Assembly (NCBI GenBank): GCA_950097015.1
Contig: CATNEN010000031.1
Location: forward strand, 682,001 to 746,000
Length of the DNA: 64,000 bases
Origin: Macrostomum hystrix
Taxonomy: Eukaryota; Animalia; Platyhelminthes
Reading direction: 5' to 3'
Shown: one piece after another, positions 11,517 through 57,154 of the stretch
Position numbering within the stretch: the first letter of the stretch is position 1
Layout: each line of letters opens with the position of its first letter
Position numbers and translations under genes: made by a program
The notes under the pieces: generated by a model
Database searches by the model: none
Told to the model about the DNA's origin: nothing
The model's input: only the letters and a program-made list of their open reading frames with translations

Positions 11517-13337
11517 CTACAGTCGCGATGACCTTTGCTGCAGCTGGTGCCTCTGCTCCAACAACTCATCCTGATCGCCCACGTTTCCCACCGAAGTCGG
11601 AGCCGATCCCGGCAGCATCACGACTCTCTGGCCGCGGGCGCCACCGCTTGTTTCGCTGCCTCCGCCGCCGCCGCCTCCGCTGTTAGCAGCAACCGTCCCC
11701 GGCTGCCCATTAGTCCTGAAGGCTGTCAGGTAAATGTAGAAAAATTCCACAACCTCAACAATGCACGCGCAGGTGAGGCCGATGGTCAACGAGCAGAGAC
11801 CGCCAATCTGGGACATTAGAGCATTCAATGTCAGGACCTGCTTCTCTTGTTTCAGGATCAAATTCTCGCCTTTCCGCTTGAGAACAACGTACGCAAAGTT
11901 TTTAGACTCAACCATCTGGTCGGCTGATTCCTGTATCGAGGTCAAGTTGTCCTTTGTCAGGTAGTGCATCAGTCGTTCCTTCACGACGTCGAATTGGGGC
12001 GCTAGGCCCTCGAGTGCCTCCTGTGGCCCGTCGTCGCGTCGATTCATCAGCCGCTGAAGCTCTTCGATGTCGTTCAAGTACTTTCCCGACCAGTACACCT
12101 GCCAGTCCGTGGCTCCCCACTCTGTCACCGACAGTTTGGTCTCGTACTCGGAGAACACGCACCTGGACAGGCAAGGAGCTGGCTGCTCCTCGCTTGACTG
12201 TACTTTTTGGACGAAGCAGTCGGAGTAGTGCAGAAAGTCGTCCAGCGTGCGGTTGAAGGCGTCCGTGAAGGTACCGCAGTAGGCAACGTCGGTGCCAGGC
12301 ATGCTGGGGCGCGGATGTCCCGGCAGGCAGATAATGCAGCCGCAACGATCTATGGCCGCCCGCTGTGTCCTCAACCTGGTGCACTCGCGCTGCGTGTACT
12401 CAAAGCGTCGGCCAAGGTCCTCGAATGACTCGGCGTCGCCCTCGATGCACGGCTTCATCGGCGTGTTGCTGCGATTCCAGATTGTCGGCGTGTAGGCCAG
12501 CTCCGTCATTTTGCCGGCCTCGATGTTTTTTCCGAATTGTTCAACATCGGGGTATCGGTTCGGCTCGTGCACGACCACGCGCAGGCCGGTAGCCTGGTCG
12601 AACACGTCGTTAAGAAAGCCCTGCTGCATGTTCAAATAATCAGGCTTCGGGCCGAGGTCAACTGCCAAGCCTAAAAAGTTCGTGTCCAGCGAGGAGGTCT
12701 CATTGTTCGGCTCCACAGTGTAGCAATTGAAGTGCTTCGGATGCGAGAACAGCTTGATGCTGAACTGATGGTCGGTGAGGTTGCAAGGGTCCTTGAAGTG
12801 GCTCATGCCCTGCTTGGTAACAATGATGCACTTGCGAATCACGCTAGGTTCGTGGCTGAGTAGCGTGATGTCTTCATAGCGCACATTCTGATAGTACATT
12901 TCCAGCATGTCGTAATAGAGTGCGTAGAAAATCGGCAGGGCGTCTCCCTGCTTGATGCGAGAAAATTTTTCTCCGGTCTTGTTGATGGCGTCCTGGGCCC
13001 AGCGGCGCAGGCGCCTGTTGTAGTCTCTGGGCGACATGACGGTGCCGTTGGCCCACAGACTGAACGCTCTTTGGGAGAATGGCCGGTGCAAGCAGATTGT
13101 GATGGCCGGAAACTTGGACGGAAACTCGGGAATGTCGGACGTGTGAACGATGACGTCATATTGCAGGTAGCTGCGCACAGCTAATGAGGACGAGATGACG
13201 AGCACAAGAGTCATGCCGATGATGAAGGAGAGCCACATCCGCCTGAGGAAGCTGGACGAGGATCTTGCAATCTTAGGCATGCCGCGAATGGAGCTGCACT
13301 CGCAGAACAGCATCGCGCTTGTCTTGCGGCCCTCCAT
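11517..13337 (-). CDS. DEG/ENaC (amiloride-sensitive sodium channel family) subunit, 606 aa, channel encoded in one exon
   Basis: TM1 (MWLSFIIGMTLVLVISSSLAV), FPAITIC, GLRVVVHEP, Cys-rich thumb (CTRL...RCGC...YC...C...CLSRC), TM2 LMSQIGGLCSLTIGLTCACIVEVVEF. Acceptor ctttcag| at 13353-13352 implies an upstream exon, possibly coding. Confidence 0.95.
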   Translation of the reverse strand: MEGRKTSAMLFCECSSIRGMPKIARSSSSFLRRMWLSFIIGMTLVLVISSSLAVRSYLQYDVIVHTSDIPEFPSKFPAITICLHRPFSQRAFSLWANGTVMSPRDYNRRLRRWAQDAINKTGEKFSRIKQGDALPIFYALYYDMLEMYYQNVRYEDITLLSHEPSVIRKCIIVTKQGMSHFKDPCNLTDHQFSIKLFSHPKHFNCYTVEPNNETSSLDTNFLGLAVDLGPKPDYLNMQQGFLNDVFDQATGLRVVVHEPNRYPDVEQFGKNIEAGKMTELAYTPTIWNRSNTPMKPCIEGDAESFEDLGRRFEYTQRECTRLRTQRAAIDRCGCIICLPGHPRPSMPGTDVAYCGTFTDAFNRTLDDFLHYSDCFVQKVQSSEEQPAPCLSRCVFSEYETKLSVTEWGATDWQVYWSGKYLNDIEELQRLMNRRDDGPQEALEGLAPQFDVVKERLMHYLTKDNLTSIQESADQMVESKNFAYVVLKRKGENLILKQEKQVLTLNALMSQIGGLCSLTIGLTCACIVEVVEFFYIYLTAFRTNGQPGTVAANSGGGGGGGSETSGGARGQRVVMLPGSAPTSVGNVGDQDELLEQRHQLQQRSSRL

Positions 13338-26778: not shown

Positions 26779-26814
26779 TGTGACAGCTCAATCCTAGCCA
26801 GCGTGCAGACAGAC

Positions 26815-27396
26815 CTCTGCTGCCAGCCGGGCGATCTCGGCGTCCTTGGCCGAGTCAGATTGGCCGACGCTGCTGAGCTCCAGTCGCAGCCGCTCGGCCA
26901 CATCCTCAGCCTTGGCGAGCTTTTCGATAAGTCCCTGACGCTCCTTCCTGGCGTCGGCCTGGTGCGTCAGGTGCTCTTTGCGCAGCTCGTCGTGCTGCCG
27001 CTTTAGTCGTTCGAGTTCTTCGGTCTTGCCAGACTCCATCTGAGTCCGGATGGCTTCCAGTTCCTTCTGATGAAACTGCTGCTGCTTCTTCAGCTTGTCC
27101 TCGTAGTCCTGGGCGTCCTTGCTGCGGCCGGCCTGCTCCTGCTCCAGTCGGCTGCGCAGGCCGTCGATTTCAGCCTTGTAGTTTTCGTGCACCTTCTGGG
27201 TGGCGCCATTCAGCGACGCCTCGATGTCGCGCTGGCTGCGGTTCACCTCGTCCAGCTTCTTCTCGTAGGCGGATTTCTGCTCGTCCAGCGCTCGCTGCCT
27301 AGCAGTTTTGGCCTCGCTCAGCAGGCCCTGGAATCGCTCGATTGCTCTGTCGTAGGCCTCCTGAAGATCTGCCACCTGCTTGGTCATGTCTTTGGC
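26815..27396 (-). CDS. FAM184A: FAM184A/B-like, exon 3
   Basis: ttggtag| ... GAG|GTCTGT; coiled-coil ORF 26794..27387. Confidence 0.87.
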
Positions 27397-34473: not shown

Positions 34474-34614
34474 CATTCCACACTCAAAGCTGTAGCAGAT
34501 GTTTTACTGAGATTATGATGCTCTTCTGGTCTGTAGAGATTGTGAATTAACTAAATAGTTTCTGTGCGACATTCATCAAATTATGGCATAAACTATGGAT
34601 CAAAAGCTATATTC

Positions 34615-36915
34615 GTAGCTAGATCCGAAGCTAAAATCACAGCTAGATCCGAAGCTAGAATCGTAGCTGGATCCGAAGCTAGAATCACAGCTGGATCCGA
34701 AGCTAGAATCACAGCTGGATCCGAAGCTAGAATCGTAGCTGGATCCGAAGCTAGAATCACAGCTGGATCCGAAGCTAGAATCACAGCTAGATCCGAAGCT
34801 AGAATCACAGCTGGATCCGAAGCTAGAATCACAGCTAGATCCGAAGCTAGAATCGTAGCTGGATCCGAAGCTAGAATCACAGCTACATCCGAAGCTAGAA
34901 TCGTAGCTAGATCCGAAGCTAGAATCACAGCTGGATCCGAAGCTAGAATCGTAGCTAGATCCGAAGCTAGAATCACAGCTGGATCCGAAGCTAGAATCGT
35001 AGCTAGATCCGAAGCTAGAATCACAGCTGGATCCGAAGCTAGAATCACAGCTGGATCCGAAGCTAGAATCGCAGCTAGATCCGAAGCTAGAATCACAGCT
35101 GGATCCGAAGCTAGAATCACAGCTAGATCCGAAGCTAGAATCACAGCTGGATCCGAAGCTAGAATCACAGCTGGATCCGAAGCTAGAATCGTAGCTGGAT
35201 CCGAAGCTAGAATCACAGCTGGATCCGAAGCTAGAATCACAGCTAGATCCGAAGCTAGAATCACAGCTGGATCCGAAGCTAGAATCACAGCTAGATCCGA
35301 AGCTAGAATCGTAGCTGGATCCGAAGCTAGAATCACAGCTACATCCGAAGCTAGAATCGTAGCTAGATCCGAAGCTAGAATCACAGCTGGATCCGAAGCT
35401 AGAATCGTAGCTAGATCCGAAGCTAGAATCACAGCTGGATCCGAAGCTAGAATCGTAGCTAGATCCGAAGCTAGAATCACAGCTGGATCCGAAGCTAGAA
35501 TCACAGCTGGATCCGAAGCTAGAATCGCAGCTAGATCCGAAGCTAGAATCACAGCTGGATCCGAAGCTAGAATCACAGCTAGATCCGAAGCTAGAATCGT
35601 AGCTGGATCCGAAGCTAGAATCACAGCTGGATCCGAAGCTAGAATCACAGCTGGATCCGAAGCTAGAATCGTAGCTGGATCCGAAGCTAGAATCACAGCT
35701 GGATCCGAAGCTAGAATCACAGCTAGATCCGAAGCTAGAATCACAGCTGGATCCGAAGCTAGAATCACAGCTAGATCCGAAGCTAGAATCGTAGCTGGAT
35801 CCGAAGCTAGAATCACAGCTACATCCGAAGCTAGAATCGTAGCTAGATCCGAAGCTAGAATCACAGCTGGATCCGAAGCTAGAATCGTAGCTAGATCCGA
35901 AGCTAGAATCACAGCTGGATCCGAAGCTAGAATCGTAGCTAGATCCGAAGCTAGAATCACAGCTGGATCCGAAGCTAGAATCACAGCTGGATCCGAAGCT
36001 AGAATCGCAGCTAGATCCGAAGCTAGAATCACAGCTGGATCCGAAGCTAGAATCACAGCTAGATCCGAAGCTAGAATCACAGCTGGATCCGAAGCTAGAA
36101 TCACAGCTGGATCCGAAGCTAGAATCGTAGCTGGATCCGAAGCTAGAATCACAGCTGGATCCGAAGCTAGAATCACAGCTAGATCCGAAGCTAGAATCAC
36201 AGCTGGATCCGAAGCTAGAATCACAGCTAGATCCGAAGCTAGAATCGTAGCTGGATCCGAAGCTAGAATCACAGCTACATCCGAAGCTAGAATCGTAGCT
36301 AGATCCGAAGCTAGAATCACAGCTGGATCCGAAGCTAGAATCGTAGCTAGATCCGAAGCTAGAATCACAGCTGGATCCGAAGCTAGAATCGTAGCTAGAT
36401 CCGAAGCTAGAATCACAGCTGGATCCGAAGCTAGAATCACAGCTGGATCCGAAGCTAGAATCGCAGCTAGATCCGAAGCTAGAATCACAGCTGGATCCGA
36501 AGCTAGAATCACAGCTAGATCCGAAGCTAGAATCACAGCTAGATCCGAAGCTAGAATCACAGCTAGATCCGAAGCTAGAATCACAGCTAGATCCGAAGCT
36601 AGAGTCACAGCTAGATCCGAAGCTAGAGTCACAGCTAGATCCGAAGCTAGAATCACAGCTGGATCCGAAGCTAGAATCACAGCTAGATCCGAAGCTAGAA
36701 TCACAGCTAGATCCGAAGCTAGAATCACAGCTAGATCCGAAGCTAGAATCGTAGCTGGATCCGAAGCTAGAATCGTAGCTAGATCCAAAGCTAGAGTCAC
36801 AGCTAGATCTGAAGCTAGAGTCACAGCTAGATCCGAAGCTAGAATCGTAGCTGGATCCGAAGCTAGAGTCAGAGCTAGATCTACAGCTAGAGTCACAGCT
36901 AGATCTACAGCTAGA
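34615..36915. repeat. 24-bp satellite (GCTGGATCCGAAGCTAGAATCACA)n with 19-20-monomer higher-order repeat
   Basis: Direct tandem copies; the rare ACATCC variant occurs at 34885, 35341, 35821 and 36277. Confidence 0.96.
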
Positions 36916-37429
36916 ATTAATGGCGAATCCACTTATACTATAAATAGTATATACCGAAAGAGCGTGAAGTCCTGAGCACAGCTATCCAGGCCAACCGCTA
37001 GTTGCAGGTGGAATTTTAATTAACATGTAACCATTTGCTATATGCTTGTGTTTTTTTCTTTTTAGCATCGTTGTAATGATTTTATCCCATGCTCCATCAT
37101 CTATTGTCAATTTTACAAGTAGAGCCTAAGAGATTCGCCACGCGAAACCGCAGTCAATGTTTTACCTTCACCCTTGCTAAATACATAGTACTGACTATGA
37201 ATACGAATAAATTATTGATTCATTCACCGACGCCGAGCTGTCAAACTTACTGTGCAATTCTAACCTGCAATCAATGTGTTCTGCTATGCTCCCTGTCCGT
37301 GCAGCTGAGACAGTGTTTGTTAACTCATGTGTTGTCACATATTCAATAGAACTGCGCAGATGTGTGTTTCAGTTCAGCAATACAGCCATGCGTGTGGTAA
37401 CTGGCTGTACTTGATATCTGATTTTGGGG

Positions 37430-42237: not shown

Positions 42238-43333
42238 ATGCCGCCTAGACTGCGGTTTGTCGCCACCTGCTCTCATTGGCTGGCCTGCCTAGCCCTGTAT
42301 CAGCTGGTCTGGCCAGCTCTCGGCCAGCTCACCACAGCCACCAACGGAATCCACTCTGCCCTGCCCACACAGCCACCGTCCCTGAATCCCGGCTTATCCA
42401 TCCCAGCTGCCCCAGCTATCCAGCCATGCGGAGCCTTCCGCGCCGTCGACTGCTCCATAGGCGACTTTCACCAGGTGGGCTTTGATGCCGGCGGCTGCCC
42501 AGTGGACTCCTGCCAGCCTTGCGGCCTGAAATCCGGCCAGCAGACCGAGTGCCAGGGCCAGACCTGTCCGCCAGTGGCACCGCCTGCTGGCTGGAGCGGC
42601 CTCTGTCCGGCCGGCCAGTTTCTGGGTGATCCGGGGCCAGAGACCGCTGGCTGTGCCTCACTGGCCTGCCTGCCCTGCCAGCCAAATCTGATGGGCCTTC
42701 GCCGCGGCTGCCGCTGCCCTCCTGAGGCCTCCCAGCCGACAGCCTGCCCCAGCGGCAAGTACCTTCACCGATTCAACGACAGCCTCGGCTGCCAGGTTTC
42801 TGCCTGCGTTGACTGTCCGCTGTTGTCTGTACCAGTCTGTCCTCCTGGCGAGTATGTGCGTTCTTACTCCAGCCCGGACACCGGCTGCCCGGTGGCCGAC
42901 TGCTCCAACTGCACTGCGGACACCGCCGACCGGCCCGGCTGCCGCCCCGCTGCCGGCTGCACCAATGCGAACAAGCCCGACTGCCCGCCAGGCCGGCAGC
43001 CCGTTCAGCAGCTGCTGCAGGGAGGAGCCGGTGGCACCGTCACCTGCCACTGGATCTGCCAGGCCTGTCCGAATGACACCCGGCCGATCGCCTGTCCGGT
43101 TGGCCAGTTTAGGCAGGACAATCCGCCGGGACACTGCCAGCCTTGGAGCTGCCGCGACTGCGACTTCAATCACCGAGACCTGCCCAGCTGCCGGCCCGCC
43201 GAGACCTGCGCCAGCCAGCCCGACTGGGCCGTCACCTGCGCCGCTGGCCACTATCGCCGGGCCGTTGCCGTAGCAACCACCGGCTGCCTCACTGTGGAAT
43301 GCGCGAGCTGCCAACAGGCTGCCAATGCCACTG
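42238..43333 (+). CDS. Secreted mosaic protein, exon 1 (signal peptide plus Cys-rich antistasin-like repeats)
   Basis: Hydrophobic N-terminus (WLACLALYQLVWPALG); repeats of C-P-x-G-x(8-14)-GC-x4-C-x2-C; donor G|GTAAAT. The six-exon model 42238-43333, 43864-44267, 44482-45225, 45513-46168, 46728-47252, 47984-50108 is phase-consistent: 5550 nt, 1849 aa. Confidence 0.88.
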
Positions 43334-43347
43334 GTAAATATGCTCTT

Positions 43348-43625
43348 GGGATTTGCGAGGTCGAGATTTCCGAGGTTGGGATTTCCGAGGTTGGGATTTC
43401 CGAGGTTGGGATTTCCGAGGTTGGGATTTCCGAGGTTGGGATTTCCGAGGTTGGGATTTCCGAGGTTGGGATTTCCGAGGTTGGGATTTCCGAGGTTGGG
43501 ATTTCCGAGGTTGGGATTTCCGAGGTTGGGATTTCCGAGGTTGGAATTTCCGAGGTTGGAATTTCCGAGGTTAGGATTTCCGAGGTTGGGATTTCCGAGG
43601 TTGGGATTTCCAAGGTTGGGATTTA
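43348..43625. repeat. 15-bp minisatellite (GGGATTTCCGAGGTT)n in intron 1, decaying to ~43780
   Basis: Direct tandem copies right after the donor; explains the EVGIS ORF tail. Confidence 0.95.
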
Positions 43626-43863
43626 ACACTACGATTTCACATATCGGGATTTCATCTATCGGGATTTCACATATTGGGATTTCAAGTATTAGGATTTCAT
43701 AAATTAGGATTTCATATATTGGGAATTTACATATTTGGATTTCAGAGATTTAGATTTAAGCGATTGGGATTTTAGAAATTGCGATTTTGAAAATTTGCAT
43801 GTGGCAAGTAATTCTGAGTTCCCCTATTGAAAAGTGTGCTCCGATTCCACCCAGCCAACCCAG

Positions 43864-44267
43864 GCCATTCCGAAGCTGCCCCAGCTGAGCTGCCTGCCGA
43901 ATGCCGCCGCTCCTGCCCTGAGCCACTGGTGCTCTGCGGCCCCGGCGCCATCGCTGAATTCAGCCTGGACGCCGACGGCTGCCGGAAGGCCACATGTCGG
44001 CCCTGCCGCGACCAGGAGGCCTGCGCCGCCAGACCCGGCTGCGGCCAGCTTGGCCGTTTGGACTTTGAAATCACTGACTGCCGGGCCGGCTACTTCCACC
44101 TGGCCAACATCAGCATCGACGGCTGCTCGGCGCGCGTCTGCCTGCCCTGCCCGGCCAGCGGGCAGCTGCCGCCCAGCTGCGGCGAACTGCCGTCCGCCTG
44201 CGTCTCGTCCGCCTTCTCGGCTGCCAGCTTGCCCAACTGCACAGCCGGAGCTCAGCAGGTGCAACAG
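43864..44267 (+). CDS. Secreted mosaic protein, exon 2 (Cys-rich repeats)
   Basis: aacccag| (phase 1) ... CAG|GTGAGT; DADGCRKATCRPC, IDGCSARVCLPC. Confidence 0.88.
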
Positions 44268-44481
44268 GTGAGTGCCAACACAATTGAACTGCGCTTTGTT
44301 GCCTCCTATGATTTTTCTGACTATTCTGATTCGTTTATTTCGTCAGTGCAGTCGTCTCTGCTTTCTAGATGTCACATTTTTATCTTCTGTCTCACGCCAT
44401 GTAACCTTCGCCATGTAGCCCTCGCCCTGTAGCCCTCGCATTTGCCGTCTTAGCTTCATCTCTCACCCTCTCCGGCTACAG

Positions 44482-45225
44482 AGCAAGTGCCTGATTTACC
44501 CGCAGGTGATCGACTCTAACGGCTGCCCCAGCCTGGCCTGCGCCGATTGTCCAGCCGACCGTCCAGCCTGTCCTGCCGGCCATCGCGAAACGCCGCGGCC
44601 AATAAAATGGCTTCAGTGCGAGCAGTTCGAATGCCGCCAGATTGCCATGTCTGACACAGCGGTCTCATCTTCGGCCTCCGCTTCATCAGCAGCGTCAGCC
44701 TCATCAGCCGCATCCGCTGCTGCGTCCTCTGCGTCCGCCGCGTCTTCCTCTTCTGCTGCGTCTTCGTCCTCTGCTGCAGCAGCAGCAGCAGCAGCGGCAG
44801 CAGCTTCTTCCTCATCCTCTTCTTCGTCATCCTCTTCTTCCTCAACTAGCACTTCGTCGGGTTCTTCAGCTGCAGCTGCAGGCGCTTCATCCGCCGCATC
44901 GTCAGGCGCGTCATCCGGTATCTCGACGATCCCTCTTGACTCGGCTGGATGTCCAGTTCAGCCGTGGCGCCAGTCCCCGATTGAGTTCAGCGCCGAATGG
45001 CTCCAGCTCGATGGCGGCTGCCGCCTGCGCCGCTACCACACCTGCCCGGCCCCAGCTGTCGTCTGTCGTCACGGCGAGCTGCCTCAGCTGACTGACGGCT
45101 GCCAGTACGCCTGCCGGCAGCAGAATTGGACCAGCAGCCCGACTGCCTGCTTTCCAGGCCAGCACTACATCATCTTTGTTGTAGACACGAACCGGGCCAA
45201 GTCGCCATTCCAGATCAGATTCCAG
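44482..45225 (+). CDS. Secreted mosaic protein, exon 3 (Cys repeats, Ser/Ala linker, VWA start)
   Basis: Acceptor ggctacag| at 44481 (in-frame alternative at 44505); donor CAG|GTGCGG; HYIIFVVDT is the VWA first strand. Confidence 0.83.
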
Positions 45226-45324
45226 GTGCGGCGCCTGCGCTTCAAATCTTCTGAATCATCAAAGCAGCTGGCCTCTTGAAAATTGAATCTAATTTCACGC
45301 AATCCCAGTCTCATATTTTCTCTT

Positions 45325-45505
45325 CTAATCTCAGGTGTTCCACTTTCATCTAATCTCAGGTGTTCCACTGTCATCTAATCTGAGGTGTTCCACTGTCATC
45401 TAATCTGAGGTGTTCCACTGTTGTCTAATCTCAGGTGTTCCACTTTCATCTAATCTCAGGTGTTCCACTGTCATCTAATCTGAGGTGTTCCACTGTTGTC
45501 TAATC
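45325..45505. repeat. 25-bp minisatellite (CTAATCTCAGGTGTTCCACTGTCAT)n ending at the exon 4 acceptor
   Basis: About 7 units; each resembles the real acceptor CTAATCTCCGCAG|GTG. Confidence 0.9.
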
Positions 45506-45512
45506 TCCGCAG

Positions 45513-46168
45513 GTGGCCTCATTCATCGCTCGTCTGTCCGGCCAGCTGGCCTACGGCGCCAGCGCTGTGCAGATCGGCGCCATCTGCTATAGCGGCCGCG
45601 TCATCAGAGTCATCAGCCCGGACGAGTGCCCCACAGCCGACGCCTTCTTCCGCCAGCTGCTGCTTCTGCGCTACGATGAGGACTCGGCGACGGCAACTGG
45701 CGACGCTGTAGCCGCGGCGGCGGCTCTACTTCGCCGGCTTCAACGGACTGAGGCGCGTCGCAGCATCGTTGTGATCACCGACAGCGTCACGAATAGCGGC
45801 CTCAGCCTGAAGTCTGCATCGGCGCTGCTGCCAAACAACACCGAGAACTACTTCGTGACCATCAGCCCCGTCTGGAACCCGGCGCTGCGTGCCGAGGCTG
45901 CCAGCTTCGTGTCCGAAGCCGACAATCTTGTTGAACTGGACTCCTACTACCTGCTGTCCACCAGCGGAGTGCAGCAGATGTTCCCGCAGTGCTACCGCGC
46001 ATGCGACTCTGCCAGGAACAGCCTGGCCGTGCGGCAGAGCTTCCTGCGCTACCTGCAGGACTCGGTGCACCAGTATGAGGCCTGGCTGTACACCGTGTAC
46101 TCCAGCATCACCCGGCTGCAGGAGGGCCTCGAGACAATGCAGTACCAGTTCGAGAGCAAGCAGATTCG
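45513..46168 (+). CDS. Secreted mosaic protein, exon 4 (VWA domain plus coiled-coil start)
   Basis: ccgcag| ... CG|GTGAGT; VASFIARL...AVQIGAICYSG...RRSIVVITDS follows the VWA pattern. Confidence 0.88.
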
Positions 46169-46278
46169 GTGAGTTAAATTCTTCCACTGACTCCTGCATC
46201 AAAGGTCGCGAGTTCGCTCCGCAACGAAGCCTGAAGAAACTTCGCCTTCTTTACCTTCTCCTTCTAAGCCCCGAATCG

Positions 46279-46605
46279 GGGTATGAGTGGCAGAGCGTTT
46301 AACGCTTTTGCCTCTCGCACCAATTCGTCCCTGAGCTCGATTCCGTGGCGAAGCCACATTCACTTGGGCGCGCAGTCACGGAGAGAAGGCTTGGTGGCTT
46401 GTCGTGCAATTTACGCCATTGAGGGCCAACCTCCAAGACACAGTGGGAGTGTGCACTGCCTGACGATGAGAAAGTCAGGGCAGACGTACACAGCTGTGTG
46501 CGTATGTGCTCAGGAGTCAGTGAAATGGTCAGAATTGCCTCCTCACTGGTCTAGTGTCACCAAATGATGTGCTATTGCCCGCAGCCCTCCTGCAATTATA
46601 TTATT
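46279..46605 (+). mobile_element. tRNA-derived SINE (family B), full-length copy in intron 4
   Basis: GAGTGGCAGAGCGTTTAA (A box), GAGCTCGATTCC (B box), body collinear with the reverse complement of 9980-10322, ATT-type tail. Confidence 0.85.
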
Positions 46606-46727
46606 TTCATTCAGCCCCGACTCGATTGTTACGAAATGAAGCCTCCTGCTACGAGCGTACATTGACCTGGGGCTTGTGAAAGCGCCTAACTAATTACCCA
46701 AGCTCAACTACCCACCTTACTTGGCAG

Positions 46728-47252
46728 TCTGGAGCTCTGCAGCCGGATGCTGTCGCATTACAAAGCCACCGTGCAGCGGCTGCAGGACCAGCTGGACAGT
46801 CTGCAGTCCATGCGCAGCCAGGCGGTCAACGCCGCCGACTACGAGAGCAGCCTGGCCCAGGTGCGCCAGCTCGAGAAGCAGGTCGAGAGCCTGACGGTGA
46901 AGAAGAGCCAGCTGGTGTCGCAGCTGCAGGAAATCCTGGTGCGCATCGGCACCGCCGAGGACCGATTGTCGGCGATGCGCCGCGACCAGGAGGCCAAGGT
47001 GGCGGCCGAGAGTGCCCAGATTGCGTCCCTGGAGACTCGCATCGCCTCCTCCTGGCAGTCGCTGCAGACGCTGACCCAGCAGCTGCTGCTGAAGCGAATG
47101 TCCGCCAGCAACGCCGAGTCAATGGTGCAGGAGAAGGAGGCGCGCATTCAGGATGTCCTTCTGCTCAACGCAGACATGGCCACACGGATCACTTCGCTGA
47201 GAACTCAAATTGAGGCGCTCAAGGCCAATACCAACAGCTCGCAGGTGGCCGG
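46728..47252 (+). CDS. Secreted mosaic protein, exon 5 (coiled coil)
   Basis: ttggcag| (phase 2) ... GG|GTGAGA; heptad-rich ORF 46747..47256. Confidence 0.88.
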
Positions 47253-47299
47253 GTGAGATTCCCCCTTCCCTTGTGACAATGCATTGTGCACAATTCCAT

Positions 47300-47910
47300 T
47301 CCATTCATTCATGCTCCTTCCATTGTGCACATTCCACTGCTCCTACCATTGTGCACATTCCACTGCTCCTTCCATTGTGCACATTCCACTGCTCCTTCCA
47401 TTGTGCACATTCTACTGCTCCTTCCATTGTGCACATTCTACTGCTCCTTCCATTGTGCACATTCCACTGCTCCTTCCATTGCGCACATTCCACTGCTCCT
47501 TCCATTGTGCACATTCCACTGCTCCTTCCATTGTGCACATTCCACTGCTCCTACCATTGTGCACATTCCACTGCTCCTTCCATTGTGCACATTCCACTGC
47601 TCCTACCATTGTGCACATTCCACTGCTCCTTCCATTGTGCACATTCCACTGCTCCTTCCATTGTGCACATTCCACTGCTCCTACCATTGTGCACATTCCA
47701 CTGCTCCTACCATTGTGCACATTCCACTGCTCCTACCATTGTGCACATTCCACTGCTCCTACCATTGTGCACATTCCACTGCTCCTTCCATTGTGCACAT
47801 TCCACTGCTCCTTCCATTGTGCACATTCTACTGCTCCTTCCATTGTGCACATTCTACTGCTCCTTCCATTGTGCACATTCCACTGCTCCTTCCATTGTGC
47901 ACATTCCACT
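47300..47910. repeat. 26-bp minisatellite (CCATTGTGCACATTCCACTGCTCCTT)n in intron 5
   Basis: Direct tandem copies between the donor at 47253 and the acceptor at 47983. Confidence 0.95.
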
Positions 47911-47983
47911 TACTCCCCATTCTGTGCATCCAATTAAAAACGTGTGCCATGCAGATGACCGAGTTGCTCGCACCCTTTCGCAG

Positions 47984-50108
47984 CTTCATCAGCACCCAGG
48001 AGGCCCTGACTAGTTGCCAGTCCGCTGCGGCCCTAGATGGCTTCAAGCCGCTCCTGACTATTCGCGCTGGCTCCGCTGTTCGCTTCCAGGAGGTCGTCGA
48101 CTCGCTACTTCGCGGCGCCGCCTACTCCTGGATGTCGGCAGCAGAGTCCGCCGAGATGCGCCAGTTTGTCGGCCTCAGCAACTTCACTGTTGGCGCCTAC
48201 AGCCAGGTGAAGCTGGTGTTCCGCAACTCGGTCGGCCTGGCCCGGGCACACCTCACCTTCCAAGCCTCCGCGTTTGACTTCACCAACTTCTTCAGCTCGG
48301 CGAATCTCATCTCCAGCTTTCCCTGGCGACTGGAGTACGTGAAGGAGACGCTCGACCTGAGCTGGAGCCTCCGCAGCGACCGCTTCCCCAGCCTCCTGTT
48401 CTCCATCCTGACACACTCGGCTGCAGCCTCTTCCGCATCGGCGAAAGCCTCTGCCACCGCAGTCGCTGCCGCGGCCGACTCCCAGTGCGCTGGTCGCAGC
48501 GGCCTCCTGGCTGTTCTGACCGATAAGGACGGCTGCGAGGACCTGCCGGGTCCGTATCCCCGCTTCCGCTTCTCCCCCTCTGGCCGGCCAGCCGCTCTAG
48601 CCGAGATGGAGGACCTGGAATCTCTCCAGCTGCTCGCCAGGCCACTCGCAACGGACGCTGACGGCTGGCTGCCCGGCCTCATCGCGTCTGCCGACATGCC
48701 GGTGACGCTAAGCGAGTTGCTTAGCAACGGCATGCTCGCCTACCCGGCCGAGGCCGCCCCTGCTGGCGCCCTGCGTCCTGGCCTGTTCTACAAGTCCGTG
48801 CTGCTCCGCTCCCGCCCGCTGGCCTTCCCCCTGATCCGCCTCCGCCTCACGGCCGCCTCCGCAAAAGTTCAGCAGATTATCTACAACGGCACCTTTGATC
48901 GCGACCGCATTGTGCAATCCACCTGGACCAGCCGGATACTGACCTCCGCCCGACTCTTCGCTGCCGATCCACCGTTCGCCTACGCCATCGGCGACGCCGC
49001 CCCCTGCCAGCTAGGCAATGCCACCGGCGTCCTCTACTTCAACCTGGACAACATCTGCCCGATTGTGGCCGACGCCAGGCGCGGCTGGTCCGTCCTAATG
49101 TCCACCGAGACCGATCGCATGGTCGACTGGAGCCAGGCCCAGCGTGCGGTCTACATAGAAATCTCTCTGAAGCGGCGAACCACTTTGGACACCGCTGCCG
49201 CCGCGCTTGCTGCCTTTGCCACCTCATCCGCAGCTGGAGCCTCAGCCGGTGCTGGAGCCTCGGCCGGTGCTGGAGCCTCAGCCGGTGCTGGAGCCTCGGC
49301 CGGTGCTGGAGCCTCAGCCGGTGCTGGAGCCTCAGCCGGTGCTGGAGCCTCGGCCGGTGCTGGAGCCTCAGCCGGTGCTGGAGCCTCGGCCGGTGCTGGA
49401 GCCTCAGCCGGTGCTGGAGCCTCGGCCGGTGCTGGAGCTTCATCTGGTTCTGGAGCCTCAGCCGGTGCTGGAGCCTCGGCCGGTGCTGGAGCCTCATCTG
49501 GTGCTGGAGCCTCGGCCGGTGCTGGAGCCTCATCTGGTGCTGGAGCCTCAGCCGGTTCTGGAGCCTCGGCCGGTGCTGGATCCTTGGCCGGTGCTGGAGC
49601 CTCAGCCGGTGCTGGAGCCTCGGCCGGTGCTGGAGCCTCATCTGGTGCTGGAGCCTCGGCCGGTGCTGGAGCCTCATCTGGTGCTGGAGCCTCAGCCGGT
49701 TCTGGAGCCTCGGCCGGTGCTGGATCCTTGGCCGGTGCTGGAGCCTCATCTGGTGCTGGAGCCTCGGCCGGTGCTGGAGCCTTGGCCGGTGCTGGAGCCT
49801 CGGCCGGTACTGGAGCCTCATCTGGTGCTGGAGCCTCATCTGGTGCTGGAGCCTCATCTGGTGCTGGAGCCTCATCTGGTGCTGGAGCCTCGGCCGGTGC
49901 TGGAGCCTCGGCCGGTGCTGGAGCCTCATCTGGTGCTGGAACCGGTGCTGGAGCCGTTGCTGGTGCTTCAGCTGCTTCCGGTGCATCCGCAGCCTCTGGA
50001 GCCTCGGCAGCTTCCGGTGCCTCCGGTGCTTCTGGTACTTCCGGTGCTTCTGGCTCTTCGTCAGCTTCCGCTGCCTCCGCAGCTTCCGCTGGCAGTCTCA
50101 GCGGTTAA
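47984..50108 (+). CDS. Secreted mosaic protein, exon 6 (two related globular domains plus (AGAGAS)n silk-like tail)
   Basis: ccctttcgcag| (phase 2); open to TAA at 50106-50108; 18-bp coding repeat GCCGGTGCTGGAGCCTC(A/G) from ~49225, then a non-repetitive Ala/Ser/Gly end written with mixed synonymous codons. Confidence 0.85.
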
Positions 50109-50764
50109 GCTTACTGTCGTTGAAATTGTATGCTCTGTTGTTGCAAGCGCTGTTCCGTTTCTCTAACTTATTTGTTTCGTTTCAACAAATACATCTTGTT
50201 ACCTGAATTAGCATTCCATTTTTGCGCCTTTGACTTCATCGCCTGTGACAGTTCTAGATTTACTTGCTAACAACAATTCGCTAGCGCGGATTCGATAATA
50301 GCCAAATGAAGTGCGCTAGAAAAAGAACTCATTATTTTATTTGTCACGCAAATTTCCCTGGAGGCCATCTGTTAGTGGAGCCATGGCTCTTCAATCAATG
50401 TCATAGAGTGGCATTCTGAACGCGGCGATGGCTAACGACTGTTATCGGACTTTTGAATTTCACTGATGCTTCTCGGCATGATTCGGATGACACCTCTGAC
50501 ACCGCTTTAGTTTATTAAGATTTTGAGTAGGCCAGCCTACTTAAGCCTACTCAATAATATTCTATCTGGTGAAATTTGATCCGATGCGATCCGGGCGAAC
50601 TGAACGATTTTAGACGAAATTTGAGACTCGTGTGAATAGCTTCAATAATAGCTTGGCAGAGATTGCACATAACCTTTGCTGAGCACTTTGTCAGATCTGG
50701 CTGTTTGTTAGCATACTAACCGTATTAATAATACTGAGCCCCAGCCCACATCCGAAATATTTTA

Positions 50765-55459: not shown

Positions 55460-57154
55460 ATGCGCTGGAAGTTTTGGAAGAAGGCGGCACAGCCTGAGCT
55501 GCAGCAGCAGCTGCCGTCAGACACCCAGGCAGATAGAAGCCTTAACCGTCAGAAGAAGCGGCGGCACTTTGAAGCCTCGTGCATTGCCGGCGCTGACACT
55601 GGCGACGAAGATTTCATCTTCGAGAGCTTCGAACGTCGGACAGCGCTCCCCGACCAGCGGGCAAATCTTCAACCGCCGCAACCACCGTCTCCGCCGCTAC
55701 CACCGACGCCGCCTCCGCCGAGGAAGAAGGAGAGCCACACTCTGCCGCGGTTCCTTCGCAGGGCGGCGAGCGTCGGGCGAAGCAAGGGTGCCCAGGCCGA
55801 AGGGACAAACGGCGCCGCGTCGGGGTCCCAGGCCATGGCCGGTAAGAAGGCAGCCGCCAGCTCTGATGAGGGCTTCCCGTCTGCCTCGTCGGGCGATCTG
55901 CTCAGCGCCGAGGACGACTCGCCCCTGGCTTACTGCCCGCACTGCAGGGCCGTGGTGCAGCCGCTGACGGTGAAGAAGCGGTCCCAGATCCGCACCAACC
56001 CCTGGCTCAAGGAGCGCAAGCGGCCGCGCATCCAGGACGACGGTGTGATGCAGAAGAGCCTGGACTCCGGCATCTCCGGCCTAGAAGATGCCAGCGCTCG
56101 GACTCCACAGTCCGCGGAGCCAGTGGAACTAACAGCGACGGCAGCGCAGACCGACGAGCTGGGCGTTGACGAGCCGGGCGAGTTCGACGAATCTCCTGGC
56201 AGCGCAGTCAACAGTGACAGCGATGGCAGCTCCACGCCCATCCTGAACCTGCGCCAGTTCCAGCCAAAGCGGAAAGTGCTCAGGAAGCGGCGACATCGTC
56301 GACGTCAACTGTCACCTGAGCAGCTGCGGCAGCAGCAGCAGCAGCAAGAACACATGCAGCAGCAGCAGTGCTGGGAAGCTGCCTACCTCTCAAGTGACGA
56401 CGAGGACCTCGCCGCTGACGCGGAGGTTTTAGCGATACATGCCTCGGCGTACACCGCCGCCTCCCAGCCGTTGTCCATAATGGCCGAGGGCATCGCCAGC
56501 GCGGGCTTCGTGCCCGAGGAGCAGAAGCTGACTGCAGTGGCCGAGGTGACGCCTGTCAGCATGAGCAGCGGCGGCGACTCCAGCAGCCTCTGGTGGGACA
56601 TGGATCGGCGTTACCTGCGCCTAATGATGGCGCCGCCGCCAGACACGAGCAGCTGCAGCAGCAGCCTCAACCTGACCGAGGCGGCCGCCTGCCAGACTCC
56701 GGTGCTCCGCTCCGACTCGGAGGGCACCGAGTTCGACTCGCCAGCCGACTCCGACTCCGAGATGGAGTTCGAACTGCCGCCTCAGTCGATGCCGCTGAAG
56801 TCAACAGAGGAGTCGCTCGCGGATGCCGTTCGGCGCCTCGCTGCCCAGAGGGACAGCCTGGATCGGCGCTTCCGTGACATTGGCGAACAGTCGCGCCGCA
56901 GCAGCACAGCCGGCGGTCGCGGCAGCCTCTTCGCTCGCGAACTGGAGCTGTACAGGAGGGAGCTGCTTCTGAGGGCCCTGGCCTCGGTGCGCGACCAGCT
57001 GGACTACCAGATGCTGCGGCTAGAGCAGCGGCCGCCGCCGGCGCCGTCGCCGCCACCGCAGCAGACAAGCTGCCTGCGACAGGCGTCAGATCCGAACGGT
57101 CGCCGCTTGTCCATTGTTCGCTGCGGCCCTGGAGAACGGATGTCCTACCACTGA
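55460..57154 (+). CDS. Intronless 564-aa uncharacterized, largely low-complexity protein
   Basis: Long GC-rich ORF with ATG and stop, codon style like the other exons; Pro, Gln and acidic tracts; C-terminal coiled-coil-like helix. No family recognised. Confidence 0.75.
   Translation: MRWKFWKKAAQPELQQQLPSDTQADRSLNRQKKRRHFEASCIAGADTGDEDFIFESFERRTALPDQRANLQPPQPPSPPLPPTPPPPRKKESHTLPRFLRRAASVGRSKGAQAEGTNGAASGSQAMAGKKAAASSDEGFPSASSGDLLSAEDDSPLAYCPHCRAVVQPLTVKKRSQIRTNPWLKERKRPRIQDDGVMQKSLDSGISGLEDASARTPQSAEPVELTATAAQTDELGVDEPGEFDESPGSAVNSDSDGSSTPILNLRQFQPKRKVLRKRRHRRRQLSPEQLRQQQQQQEHMQQQQCWEAAYLSSDDEDLAADAEVLAIHASAYTAASQPLSIMAEGIASAGFVPEEQKLTAVAEVTPVSMSSGGDSSSLWWDMDRRYLRLMMAPPPDTSSCSSSLNLTEAAACQTPVLRSDSEGTEFDSPADSDSEMEFELPPQSMPLKSTEESLADAVRRLAAQRDSLDRRFRDIGEQSRRSSTAGGRGSLFARELELYRRELLLRALASVRDQLDYQMLRLEQRPPPAPSPPPQQTSCLRQASDPNGRRLSIVRCGPGERMSYH

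What the first reader, a model, noticed from the sequence alone, without database searches (positions are those of the whole stretch)
42238..50108. ~1849-aa secreted mosaic protein ending in a silk-fibroin-like (AGAGAS)n tail: candidate structural, adhesive or cocoon material
Seen in sequence: six exons join in phase to give signal peptide > ~11 Cys-rich repeats (C-P-x-G...GC-x4-C-x2-C, antistasin-like) > Ser/Ala linker > VWA domain > ~230-aa coiled coil > two related globular domains > ~290-aa Ala/Gly/Ser tail, with no TM or GPI tail. Established: alternating Gly/Ala-Ser hexapeptides form beta-sheet crystallites in Bombyx fibroin (GAGAGS), and VWA plus coiled coil is the matrilin-type oligomerising ECM layout. 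Inference: this protein could oligomerise through the coiled coil, cross-link through disulfides and polymerise into fibres through the tail. I know no described protein with this combination. The ORF track hides it because the frames run on into intronic minisatellites.
Basis: partly seen in the sequence, partly recalled or inferred. Interest (0 to 1): 0.82.

Follow-up and report, generated by a model that had tools for sequence, protein, structure and literature searches.

The report
Flatworm secreted protein with silk-like tail
The flatworm Macrostomum hystrix really transcribes a single-copy gene for a roughly 1,840-residue secreted protein, built by adding cysteine-rich repeats and an alanine/glycine/serine silk-like tail to an older VWA–coiled-coil protein; it is a good candidate for a secreted structural material, but the tail is not the fibroin repeat and nothing yet shows it forms fibres.

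Summary
The gene is real. The genome is Macrostomum hystrix (size and contig count match PMC10468722). RNA contigs show four of five introns spliced, and one 4,783-nt contig runs from the 5' region into the tail. The protein is 1,841-1,844 aa, not 1,849. Confirmed: signal peptide (by eye), 11 Cys repeats, Ser/Ala linker, VWA with a broken MIDAS, 237-aa coiled coil, ~390-aa globular region, 309-aa tail, no TM. Corrections: the tail is (ASAGAG)n with Ala, not Gly, at every second position and no GAGAGS; the Cys repeats are not Pfam antistasin; the two globular domains are not significantly alike. New: a 924-aa paralog on contig 3 has the core (signal, VWA with intact MIDAS, coiled coil, two orphan domains) without Cys repeats or tail, so both are probably add-ons. 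A possible KRR cleavage site precedes the tail. No relatives were found outside this genome. It meets the published 'silk-like structural protein' criteria, a common, repeatedly evolved class, and is not adhesive ap1/ap2. Tissue, fibre formation and selection on the tail are untested, and the stop codon was not seen in RNA. The scan had not noted this or the paralog before.

The parts
42238..43333 (+). Exon 1: ATG, signal peptide, Cys repeats 1-7
   Evidence: Open frame; donor G|GTAAAT. The 1,603 nt of contig upstream of 44506 fit exons 1+2 plus ~95-105 nt of UTR.
42238..42324 (+). Signal peptide, aa 1-29 (basic N-region, hydrophobic core, A-L-G|Q cleavage)
   Evidence: Read from sequence by the -3/-1 rule; SignalP not available
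42427..44634 (+). 11 Cys-rich repeats, C-P-x-G-x(10-17)-C-x4-C-x2-C, over exons 1-3 (aa 64-546)
   Evidence: Alignment A2; HMM finds 11 plus traces of 2 decayed copies; no Pfam hit; no other copy in the genome
43346..43624 (.). 15-bp minisatellite in intron 1; the exon-1 ORF runs on into it
43855..44267 (+). Exon 2 (acceptor 43855 or 43864): Cys repeats 8-9 and the start of 10
   Evidence: In phase; donor seen in RNA contigs
44506..45225 (+). Exon 3: repeats 10-11, Ser/Ala linker, decayed repeats, first VWA strand
   Evidence: Both ends seen in RNA contigs
44665..44916 (+). Ser/Ala linker, aa 557-640 (45 Ser, 34 Ala, mixed codons)
45157..45992 (+). VWA domain, aa ~721-903, split by intron 3; MIDAS D-x-S-x-S replaced by D-T-N-R-A
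   Evidence: PF00092 E 2.1e-9; alignment to the paralog's intact MIDAS
45513..46168 (+). Exon 4: VWA and start of the coiled coil
   Evidence: Both ends seen in RNA contigs
46285..46605 (.). ~320-bp interspersed repeat (SINE-like) in intron 4
   Evidence: 3,572 candidate places in the genome, 84-89% identity; high contig depth
45996..47247 (+). Coiled coil, aa ~904-1140, Pro-free, split by intron 4
   Evidence: a/d heptad bias and zero Pro; many weak coiled-coil Pfam hits
46728..47252 (+). Exon 5: coiled coil
   Evidence: Both ends seen in RNA contigs
47312..47910 (.). 26-bp minisatellite in intron 5; fuses with exon 6 into the apparent 940-aa ORF
   Evidence: essentially no RNA contig coverage
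47984..50108 (+). Exon 6: orphan domains D1 and D2, KRR, tail, stop
   Evidence: Acceptor in RNA contigs; X1 and X5 contigs run to 49262; pieces to 49839 in X2; stop not covered
48012..48641 (+). Orphan globular domain D1 (aa 1147-1356), homologous to D1 of the contig-3 paralog
   Evidence: BLASTP E 4e-6; Smith-Waterman 90 vs 33±5 shuffled; reciprocal genome hits
48642..49169 (+). Orphan globular region D2 (aa 1357-1532), probably a diverged second copy
   Evidence: Shares YKS-x-LL and C-x15/16-C with the paralog, but not significant; Atlas feature score 0.94 to unnamed cnidarian and phage clusters, 0.90 to a cluster with 29% Fibrinogen_C
49170..49178 (+). K-R-R at the domain/tail boundary: possible convertase site
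   Evidence: Sequence; cleavage is inference
49179..50105 (+). 309-aa Ala/Gly/Ser tail; no Cys, Tyr or Pro, almost uncharged
49239..49940 (+). Core of 39 18-bp units encoding ASAGAG (22), ASSGAG (10) and variants; no indels; unique in the genome

Best explanation
A lineage-restricted secreted structural protein of Macrostomum hystrix, most likely a gland or extracellular-material component. SHOWN: it is transcribed and spliced as one gene, and its core (VWA, coiled coil, orphan domain pair) is shared with a simpler paralog. INFERRED: the Cys repeats, linker and tail were added in this copy. It enters the secretory pathway and forms a parallel rod-shaped oligomer through the ~237-aa coiled coil, with the Cys-repeat arm (disulfide-stabilised) and a metal-independent VWA at one end and the D1-D2 heads at the other. 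This bundles several uncharged (Ala-X)n tails. Once concentrated or released, perhaps after cleavage at KRR, the tails stack into small-residue beta-sheets that act as physical cross-links of a film, gel or fibril. It works like a silk-like structural protein; it is not a fibroin.
For: Spliced contig across the domains into the tail. Signal peptide, no TM, and 35% Gly in an 80-aa window meet the SilkSlider definition (PMC4944945), whose hits are often biological-material proteins, including Gly-rich tails grafted onto other domains. Two-residue alternation over 240 aa with only small residues and no Pro. Ala/Ser/Gly bias with mixed codons in the linker and the last 55 aa points to composition kept at protein level. 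The paralog lacks the tail and Cys arm. The paralog's VWA best matches collagen VI and mussel byssal PTMP1 among solved structures.
Against: No tissue, proteomic or biophysical data. The core is codon-homogeneous, like the many non-coding minisatellites nearby. Its few changes do not show significant purifying selection (2 of 8 events leave Gly/Ala/Ser against 48% expected, p = 0.17). No ortholog was found, so tail conservation is untested. Ser on the Gly face departs from the fibroin pattern. The tail is only 17% of the chain. Contig depth cannot show high expression. The 3' end was not seen in RNA.
Confidence: 0.5

Rival explanations
1. An ordinary matrix or basement-membrane adaptor of the VWA plus coiled-coil type. 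Its short Ala/Ser/Gly C-terminus was inflated by a young, tolerated 18-bp coding minisatellite; the tail is a disordered or O-glycosylated spacer, or is clipped off, and forms no material.
For: Minisatellites are everywhere in this window, including three introns of this gene. The core uses near-fixed codons. No significant selection signal. The paralog does without the tail.
Against: Five of the six non-synonymous or paired change types stay among small residues or are rare; the Gly codons never vary in 39 units; there are no indels; flanks and linker have the same composition with mixed codons.
Confidence: 0.27
2. A reproduction-related secretion (prostate or seminal fluid, or female cement gland) that evolves fast. 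In this hypodermically inseminating species it could form a plug, sperm matrix or egg-attachment coat. This can overlap with the best explanation.
For: Tail-region and prostate genes in Macrostomum are enriched for signal peptides and often lack homologues (PMC7336406; PMC5977470).
Against: No positional or stage-specific expression could be read. The tail has no Tyr or His, so it is not a tanned eggshell precursor type (own knowledge).
Confidence: 0.12
3. A soluble recognition or defence protein of the coiled coil plus fibrinogen-like head type, with protease-inhibitor-like Cys repeats.
For: Atlas feature neighbours of D2 include Fibrinogen_C and COLFI clusters at 0.87-0.90. The Cys repeats share the CPxG..DxxGC core with antistasin (hhalign probability 41%, above 100 of 100 column shuffles).
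Against: No PF00147 hit; hhalign against 21 M. hystrix fibrinogen domains is at shuffle level. No PF02822 hit and different Cys spacing. It does not explain the tail.
Confidence: 0.07
4. The 3' end of the model is wrong: transcripts end or splice inside the tail, or the array is much shorter in most animals.
For: No contig in four runs covers 50010-50200, and X1/X5 coverage fades after ~49450.
Against: Short-read contigs break in perfect repeats, and the tool warns that holes prove nothing. X2 holds exact pieces at 49521-49637 and 49755-49839. The frame is open to 50108.
Confidence: 0.04

Closest known systems
Silk-like structural proteins (SLSPs; McDougall, Woodcroft and Degnan 2016, PMC4944945)
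   Same: Signal peptide, no TM, at least 25% Gly in 80 aa (35% here), modular, lineage-restricted, Gly-rich part joined to other domains.
   Different: An operational class, not a family. The paper's main text does not mention flatworms by that word. This domain set was not found elsewhere.
Bombyx mori fibroin heavy chain (GAGAGS)n (own knowledge)
   Same: Hexapeptide of only Gly, Ala and Ser with two-residue alternation, 18-bp DNA unit, no Pro.
   Different: Ala, not Gly, fills every second position; zero GAGAGS; 240 aa of repeat rather than thousands; no Tyr-rich blocks or fibroin terminal domains; most of the chain is other domains.
Matrilins, collagen VI and mussel PTMP1 (VWA matrix adaptors)
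   Same: Secreted VWA; VWA followed by a coiled coil; the paralog's VWA matches collagen VI alpha-3 and PTMP1.
   Different: One VWA with a broken MIDAS; no EGF repeats or collagen triplets; the coiled coil is long (237 aa) and internal, followed by globular domains and a tail.
Macrostomum adhesive proteins ap1 and ap2 (PMC6410801, PMC8621496)
   Same: Same genus; large, secreted, Cys-rich region plus low-complexity repeats.
   Different: No vWD, C8, TIL, EGF, C-lectin, LDL or TSP1 domain; no Gly-Arg-Lys region; net charge near neutral; VWA is a different domain from vWD.
Antistasin repeats (PF02822)
   Same: C-P-x-G-aromatic ... D-x-x-G-C core.
   Different: Longer loop; C-x4-C-x2-C instead of C-x2-C-x-C; no Pfam hit.
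M. hystrix paralog at G000:C3:7631226-7634429 (undescribed)
   Same: Signal, VWA, coiled coil, two orphan domains in the same order; D1 and VWA significantly alike.
   Different: 924 aa, three exons, intact MIDAS, no Cys repeats, no linker, no tail.

Membership tests
Silk-like structural protein (SilkSlider definition) | At least 25% Gly in an 80-aa window | tested here: met
   Maximum 35%; 232 windows pass, all overlapping the tail
Silk-like structural protein (SilkSlider definition) | Signal peptide and no TM helix | tested here: met
   By inspection and hydropathy only, maximum 1.46; SignalP and TMHMM not available
Silk-like structural protein (SilkSlider definition) | Component of a biological material | not testable with these tools
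   Needs localisation and proteomics
Bombyx-type fibroin heavy chain | (Gly-X)n with Gly at every second residue; GAGAGS | tested here: not met
   0 GAGAGS; odd positions Ala 101/120, even positions Gly 79 and Ser 37
Bombyx-type fibroin heavy chain | Fibroin terminal domains; chain dominated by repeats | tested here: not met
   No Pfam hit on any exon but VWA; tail is 309 of 1,844 aa
Bombyx-type fibroin heavy chain | Antiparallel beta-sheet crystallites in a fibre | not testable with these tools
   Needs FTIR, CD or X-ray diffraction
VWA domain (PF00092) | Score over the Pfam cut-off | tested here: met
   38.3 bits against a cut-off of 23.8
VWA domain (PF00092) | Complete MIDAS (DxSxS..T..D) | tested here: not met
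   D-T-N-R-A against the paralog's D-G-S-E-S; later Thr and Asp kept
Matrilin | VWA, EGF repeats, short C-terminal coiled coil | tested here: not met
   No EGF hit; coiled coil long and internal
Macrostomum ap1/ap2 | vWD-C8-TIL with EGF or TSP1 domains; GRK or 220-255-aa repeats | tested here: not met
Antistasin (PF02822) | Pfam match and C-x2-C-x-C ending | tested here: not met
   Locus absent among 10 genome matches at E<=10; spacing x4/x2
Antistasin (PF02822) | Serine-protease inhibition | not testable with these tools
   Assay needed
Fibrinogen-related domain (PF00147) for D1/D2 | Sequence or profile match | tested here: not met
Fibrinogen-related domain (PF00147) for D1/D2 | Fibrinogen-like fold | tested here: inconclusive
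   AlphaFold2 models at pLDDT ~30; Atlas lead 0.86-0.90 with a low recognition value

The most novel reading that the evidence does not exclude
The first fibre- or film-forming silk-like protein of a free-living flatworm. An 'inverted fibroin' hexapeptide (one Ala face, one Gly/Gly/Ser face) was grafted onto a VWA-coiled-coil chassis with an undescribed domain pair; the coiled coil pre-aligns the tails, and cleavage at KRR releases a 22-kDa self-assembling peptide. The tail-less paralog would make its origin directly traceable.
Probability: 0.2. Interest if true: 0.72.

Novelty: new variant of a known kind. Interest (0 to 1): 0.46.

Why it matters
The characterised Macrostomum glues are charged, vWD/EGF-type proteins; the materials of its other secretions (rhabdites, mucus, cement, prostate) are much less known at protein level. 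This gene gives a named, single-copy RNAi and in situ target in a tractable species. If the tail assembles, it is a natural test of how swapping the Gly and Ala faces of the fibroin hexapeptide changes beta-sheet packing. The tail-less paralog shows how such a protein can be built, and it supplies a second copy of an unclassified domain pair. If the tail is only a tolerated minisatellite, the value drops to an odd lineage-specific matrix protein.

Tried and rejected
Word searches with exon-6 D1-D2, D1 alone and the paralog's domains found nothing; their length windows exclude full-length relatives. The big phmmer search was used once because the claim rests on absence of relatives. Its single hit, P0001, is a bacterial DUF285/InlB-B-repeat protein matched through six summed weak repeats and was rejected as chance. 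AlphaFold2 on exon 6 and on D2 gave pLDDT ~30, so no fold search was run. NCBIfam, PHROGs, PDB sequence, phage tblastn, metagenome and viral scans gave nothing useful. Rfam found nothing. Acceptors 44454, 44482, 45460, 45546, 46615, 46743, 47955 and 47993 were rejected by frame or by RNA contigs. Run X2 is not an ortholog source: its pieces are ~100% identical at low depth, and its loose ends at 49841/49882 come from an unrelated Ala/Gly-rich transcript. The tail is unlike a Tyr/DOPA eggshell precursor (no Tyr). One search exceeded the pattern-size limit and was re-sent within the limit. The joined protein was translated only inside scripts (phase, composition, local comparison with the paralog) and never sent to a search or fold tool.
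Full report
Organism. The assembly has 220,453,370 bases in 42 contigs. These are exactly the figures published for Macrostomum hystrix (PMC10468722), a brackish-water, hypodermically inseminating free-living flatworm.

Gene structure. Six exons join without stops from ATG 42238 to TAA 50108. Laying four public runs on 44210-50200 showed GT..AG joints 44267>44506, 45225>45513, 46168>46728 and 47252>47984 in runs X1 and X5, from two studies. The joint 45225>45513 also appears in X2 and in a sediment metatranscriptome. One 4,783-nt contig in X5 carries all four joints and ends at 49262, 40 nt into the repeat. It has 1,603 nt upstream of 44506, which fits exons 1 and 2 (1,500-1,509 nt) plus about 95-105 nt of UTR. 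A retained intron 1 would force a short-read contig through a 280-bp near-perfect minisatellite, so splicing of intron 1 is likely but inferred. The RNA status of X1, X2 and X5 is not on record, but their contigs lack the introns. The protein is 1,844 aa (acceptor 43855) or 1,841 aa (43864), about 182 kDa mature. Exact pieces of the tail interior occur in X2, but nothing covers 50010-50200, so the stop is not confirmed in RNA.

Anatomy. A signal peptide (aa 1-29, by inspection) is followed by 11 repeats of C-P-x-G...C-x4-C-x2-C. They share the CPxG..DxxGC core with this genome's antistasin repeats (hhalign probability 41%, above all 100 column shuffles). But PF02822 does not hit the locus and the spacing differs, so this is a resemblance, not membership. 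Next come an 84-aa Ser/Ala linker and a VWA domain (PF00092, E 2e-9) whose MIDAS is broken (D-T-N-R-A). A 237-aa Pro-free heptad region follows, then about 390 aa of globular sequence with no family hit, a K-R-R triplet, and a 309-aa tail. There is no TM or GPI-type segment.

The tail. Its core is 39 units of 18 bp without indels: 22 ASAGAG, 10 ASSGAG and seven variants. The pattern occurs nowhere else in the genome. It alternates strictly, but the other way round from fibroin: odd positions are Ala (101/120), even positions Gly or Ser (79 and 37 of 120), and GAGAGS never occurs. From general knowledge of silk structure, such a strand could still form beta-sheets, but it lacks the all-Gly face that packs tightly in Bombyx silk. 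Codons in the core are nearly fixed, as in a recent expansion, and this window is full of non-coding minisatellites. Of eight distinct changes, three are silent, three are Ala to Ser and two leave Gly/Ala/Ser; this leans towards constraint but is not significant (p = 0.17). The last 55 aa and the linker have the same composition with mixed codons, which suggests an older protein-level bias.

A paralog. A profile of the two globular halves found one other place in the genome, and that place finds this gene back. The locus on contig 3 gives a three-exon, 924-aa model: signal peptide, VWA with intact MIDAS (E 6.5e-23), coiled coil, two tandem domains; its splicing was not checked in RNA. D1 matches the paralog's D1 (BLASTP E 4e-6; Smith-Waterman 90 against 33±5), and the VWA domains match at 83 against 30±5. 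A profile of both D1 copies recognises the paralog's D2 (6 of 2,000 shuffles reach it). D2 of the query is not significantly matched by anything, though it keeps YKS-x-LL and a C-x16-C pair in the same position. So 'two related domains' is probable but only indirectly supported. The paralog has no Cys repeats, linker or tail. The simplest reading is that these were added in this copy; loss in the paralog is not excluded without outgroups.

Relatives elsewhere. None were found in three word searches, in phmmer of D1-D2 against 1.84 billion representatives (one chance bacterial hit), or in metagenome, viral, phage and PDB searches. The word searches cannot see full-length kin, and only D1-D2 went through the unrestricted search. 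The ESM Atlas places D2 near unnamed 170-190-aa cnidarian and phage clusters (0.94) and a partly Fibrinogen_C cluster (0.90), with a low recognition value. Direct comparison with 21 M. hystrix fibrinogen domains was at shuffle level and AlphaFold2 models were unusable. A diverged fibrinogen-like fold is a lead only.

How it most likely works. Shown: one secreted-type transcript with this domain order. Inferred: a rod-shaped oligomer through the coiled coil, a disulfide-stabilised N-terminal arm, metal-independent binding by the VWA, and several uncharged tails held side by side that stack into beta-sheet cross-links of a film, gel or fibril, possibly after cleavage at KRR (confidence 0.5). The main rival is a VWA/coiled-coil matrix adaptor with a tolerated minisatellite tail (0.27). 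A reproductive secretion (0.12), a recognition or inhibitor protein (0.07) and a wrong 3' end (0.04) are weaker.

Comparison with what is known. It meets the SilkSlider definition of a silk-like structural protein (35% Gly in 80 aa). That class is widespread, repeatedly evolved and often joins a Gly-rich part to other domains (PMC4944945); mussel preCol-D and barnacle cement proteins are marine examples. It is not a fibroin, a matrilin or Macrostomum ap1/ap2. Literature searches found no flatworm protein with this layout, within the limits of an open-access library.

Verdict. A real, expressed, single-copy, undescribed mosaic gene with a traceable tail-less paralog: a new variant of a known kind. 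The silk function is plausible and easy to test but rests on composition alone. Interest 0.46.

Noticed in passing
L070:226-3429 (G000:C3:7631226-7634429, +): Undescribed 924-aa three-exon paralog: signal, VWA with intact MIDAS, coiled coil, two orphan domains; the best seed for identifying the domain family.
   Followed up: partly
window 46285-46605: ~320-bp SINE-like interspersed repeat in intron 4; 3,572 candidate places in the genome at 84-89% identity, abundant in RNA contigs.
   Followed up: partly
whole genome G000: At least 161 Fibrinogen_C matches, with clusters on contigs 2, 15, 38 and 39: a large expansion of fibrinogen-related genes.
   Followed up: no
window 11517-13337 (-): Intronless 606-aa amiloride-sensitive sodium channel (ENaC/ASIC, PF00858, E 5e-48).
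   Followed up: no
window 26794-27387 (-): FAM184 exon (PF15665), part of the neighbouring gene on the minus strand.
   Followed up: no
window 34596-36917: 2.3-kb array of 24/48-bp units that is open in frames on both strands (803 and 779 aa); its Pfam hits look like repeat artefacts; coding status unchecked.
   Followed up: no
window 55460-57154 (+): Single-ORF 564-aa low-complexity protein with no Pfam hit and a short C-terminal coiled-coil-like segment; likely intracellular.
   Followed up: no
window 44968-45639 and 46842-47069, run X3: A sediment metatranscriptome from an unrelated study holds spliced pieces of this gene with one difference each, so wild animals express it.
   Followed up: partly
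window 48417-48476 (inside D1): An Ala/Ser-rich insert of about 20 aa in D1 that the paralog lacks: a third place where the same composition has expanded in this gene.
   Followed up: no
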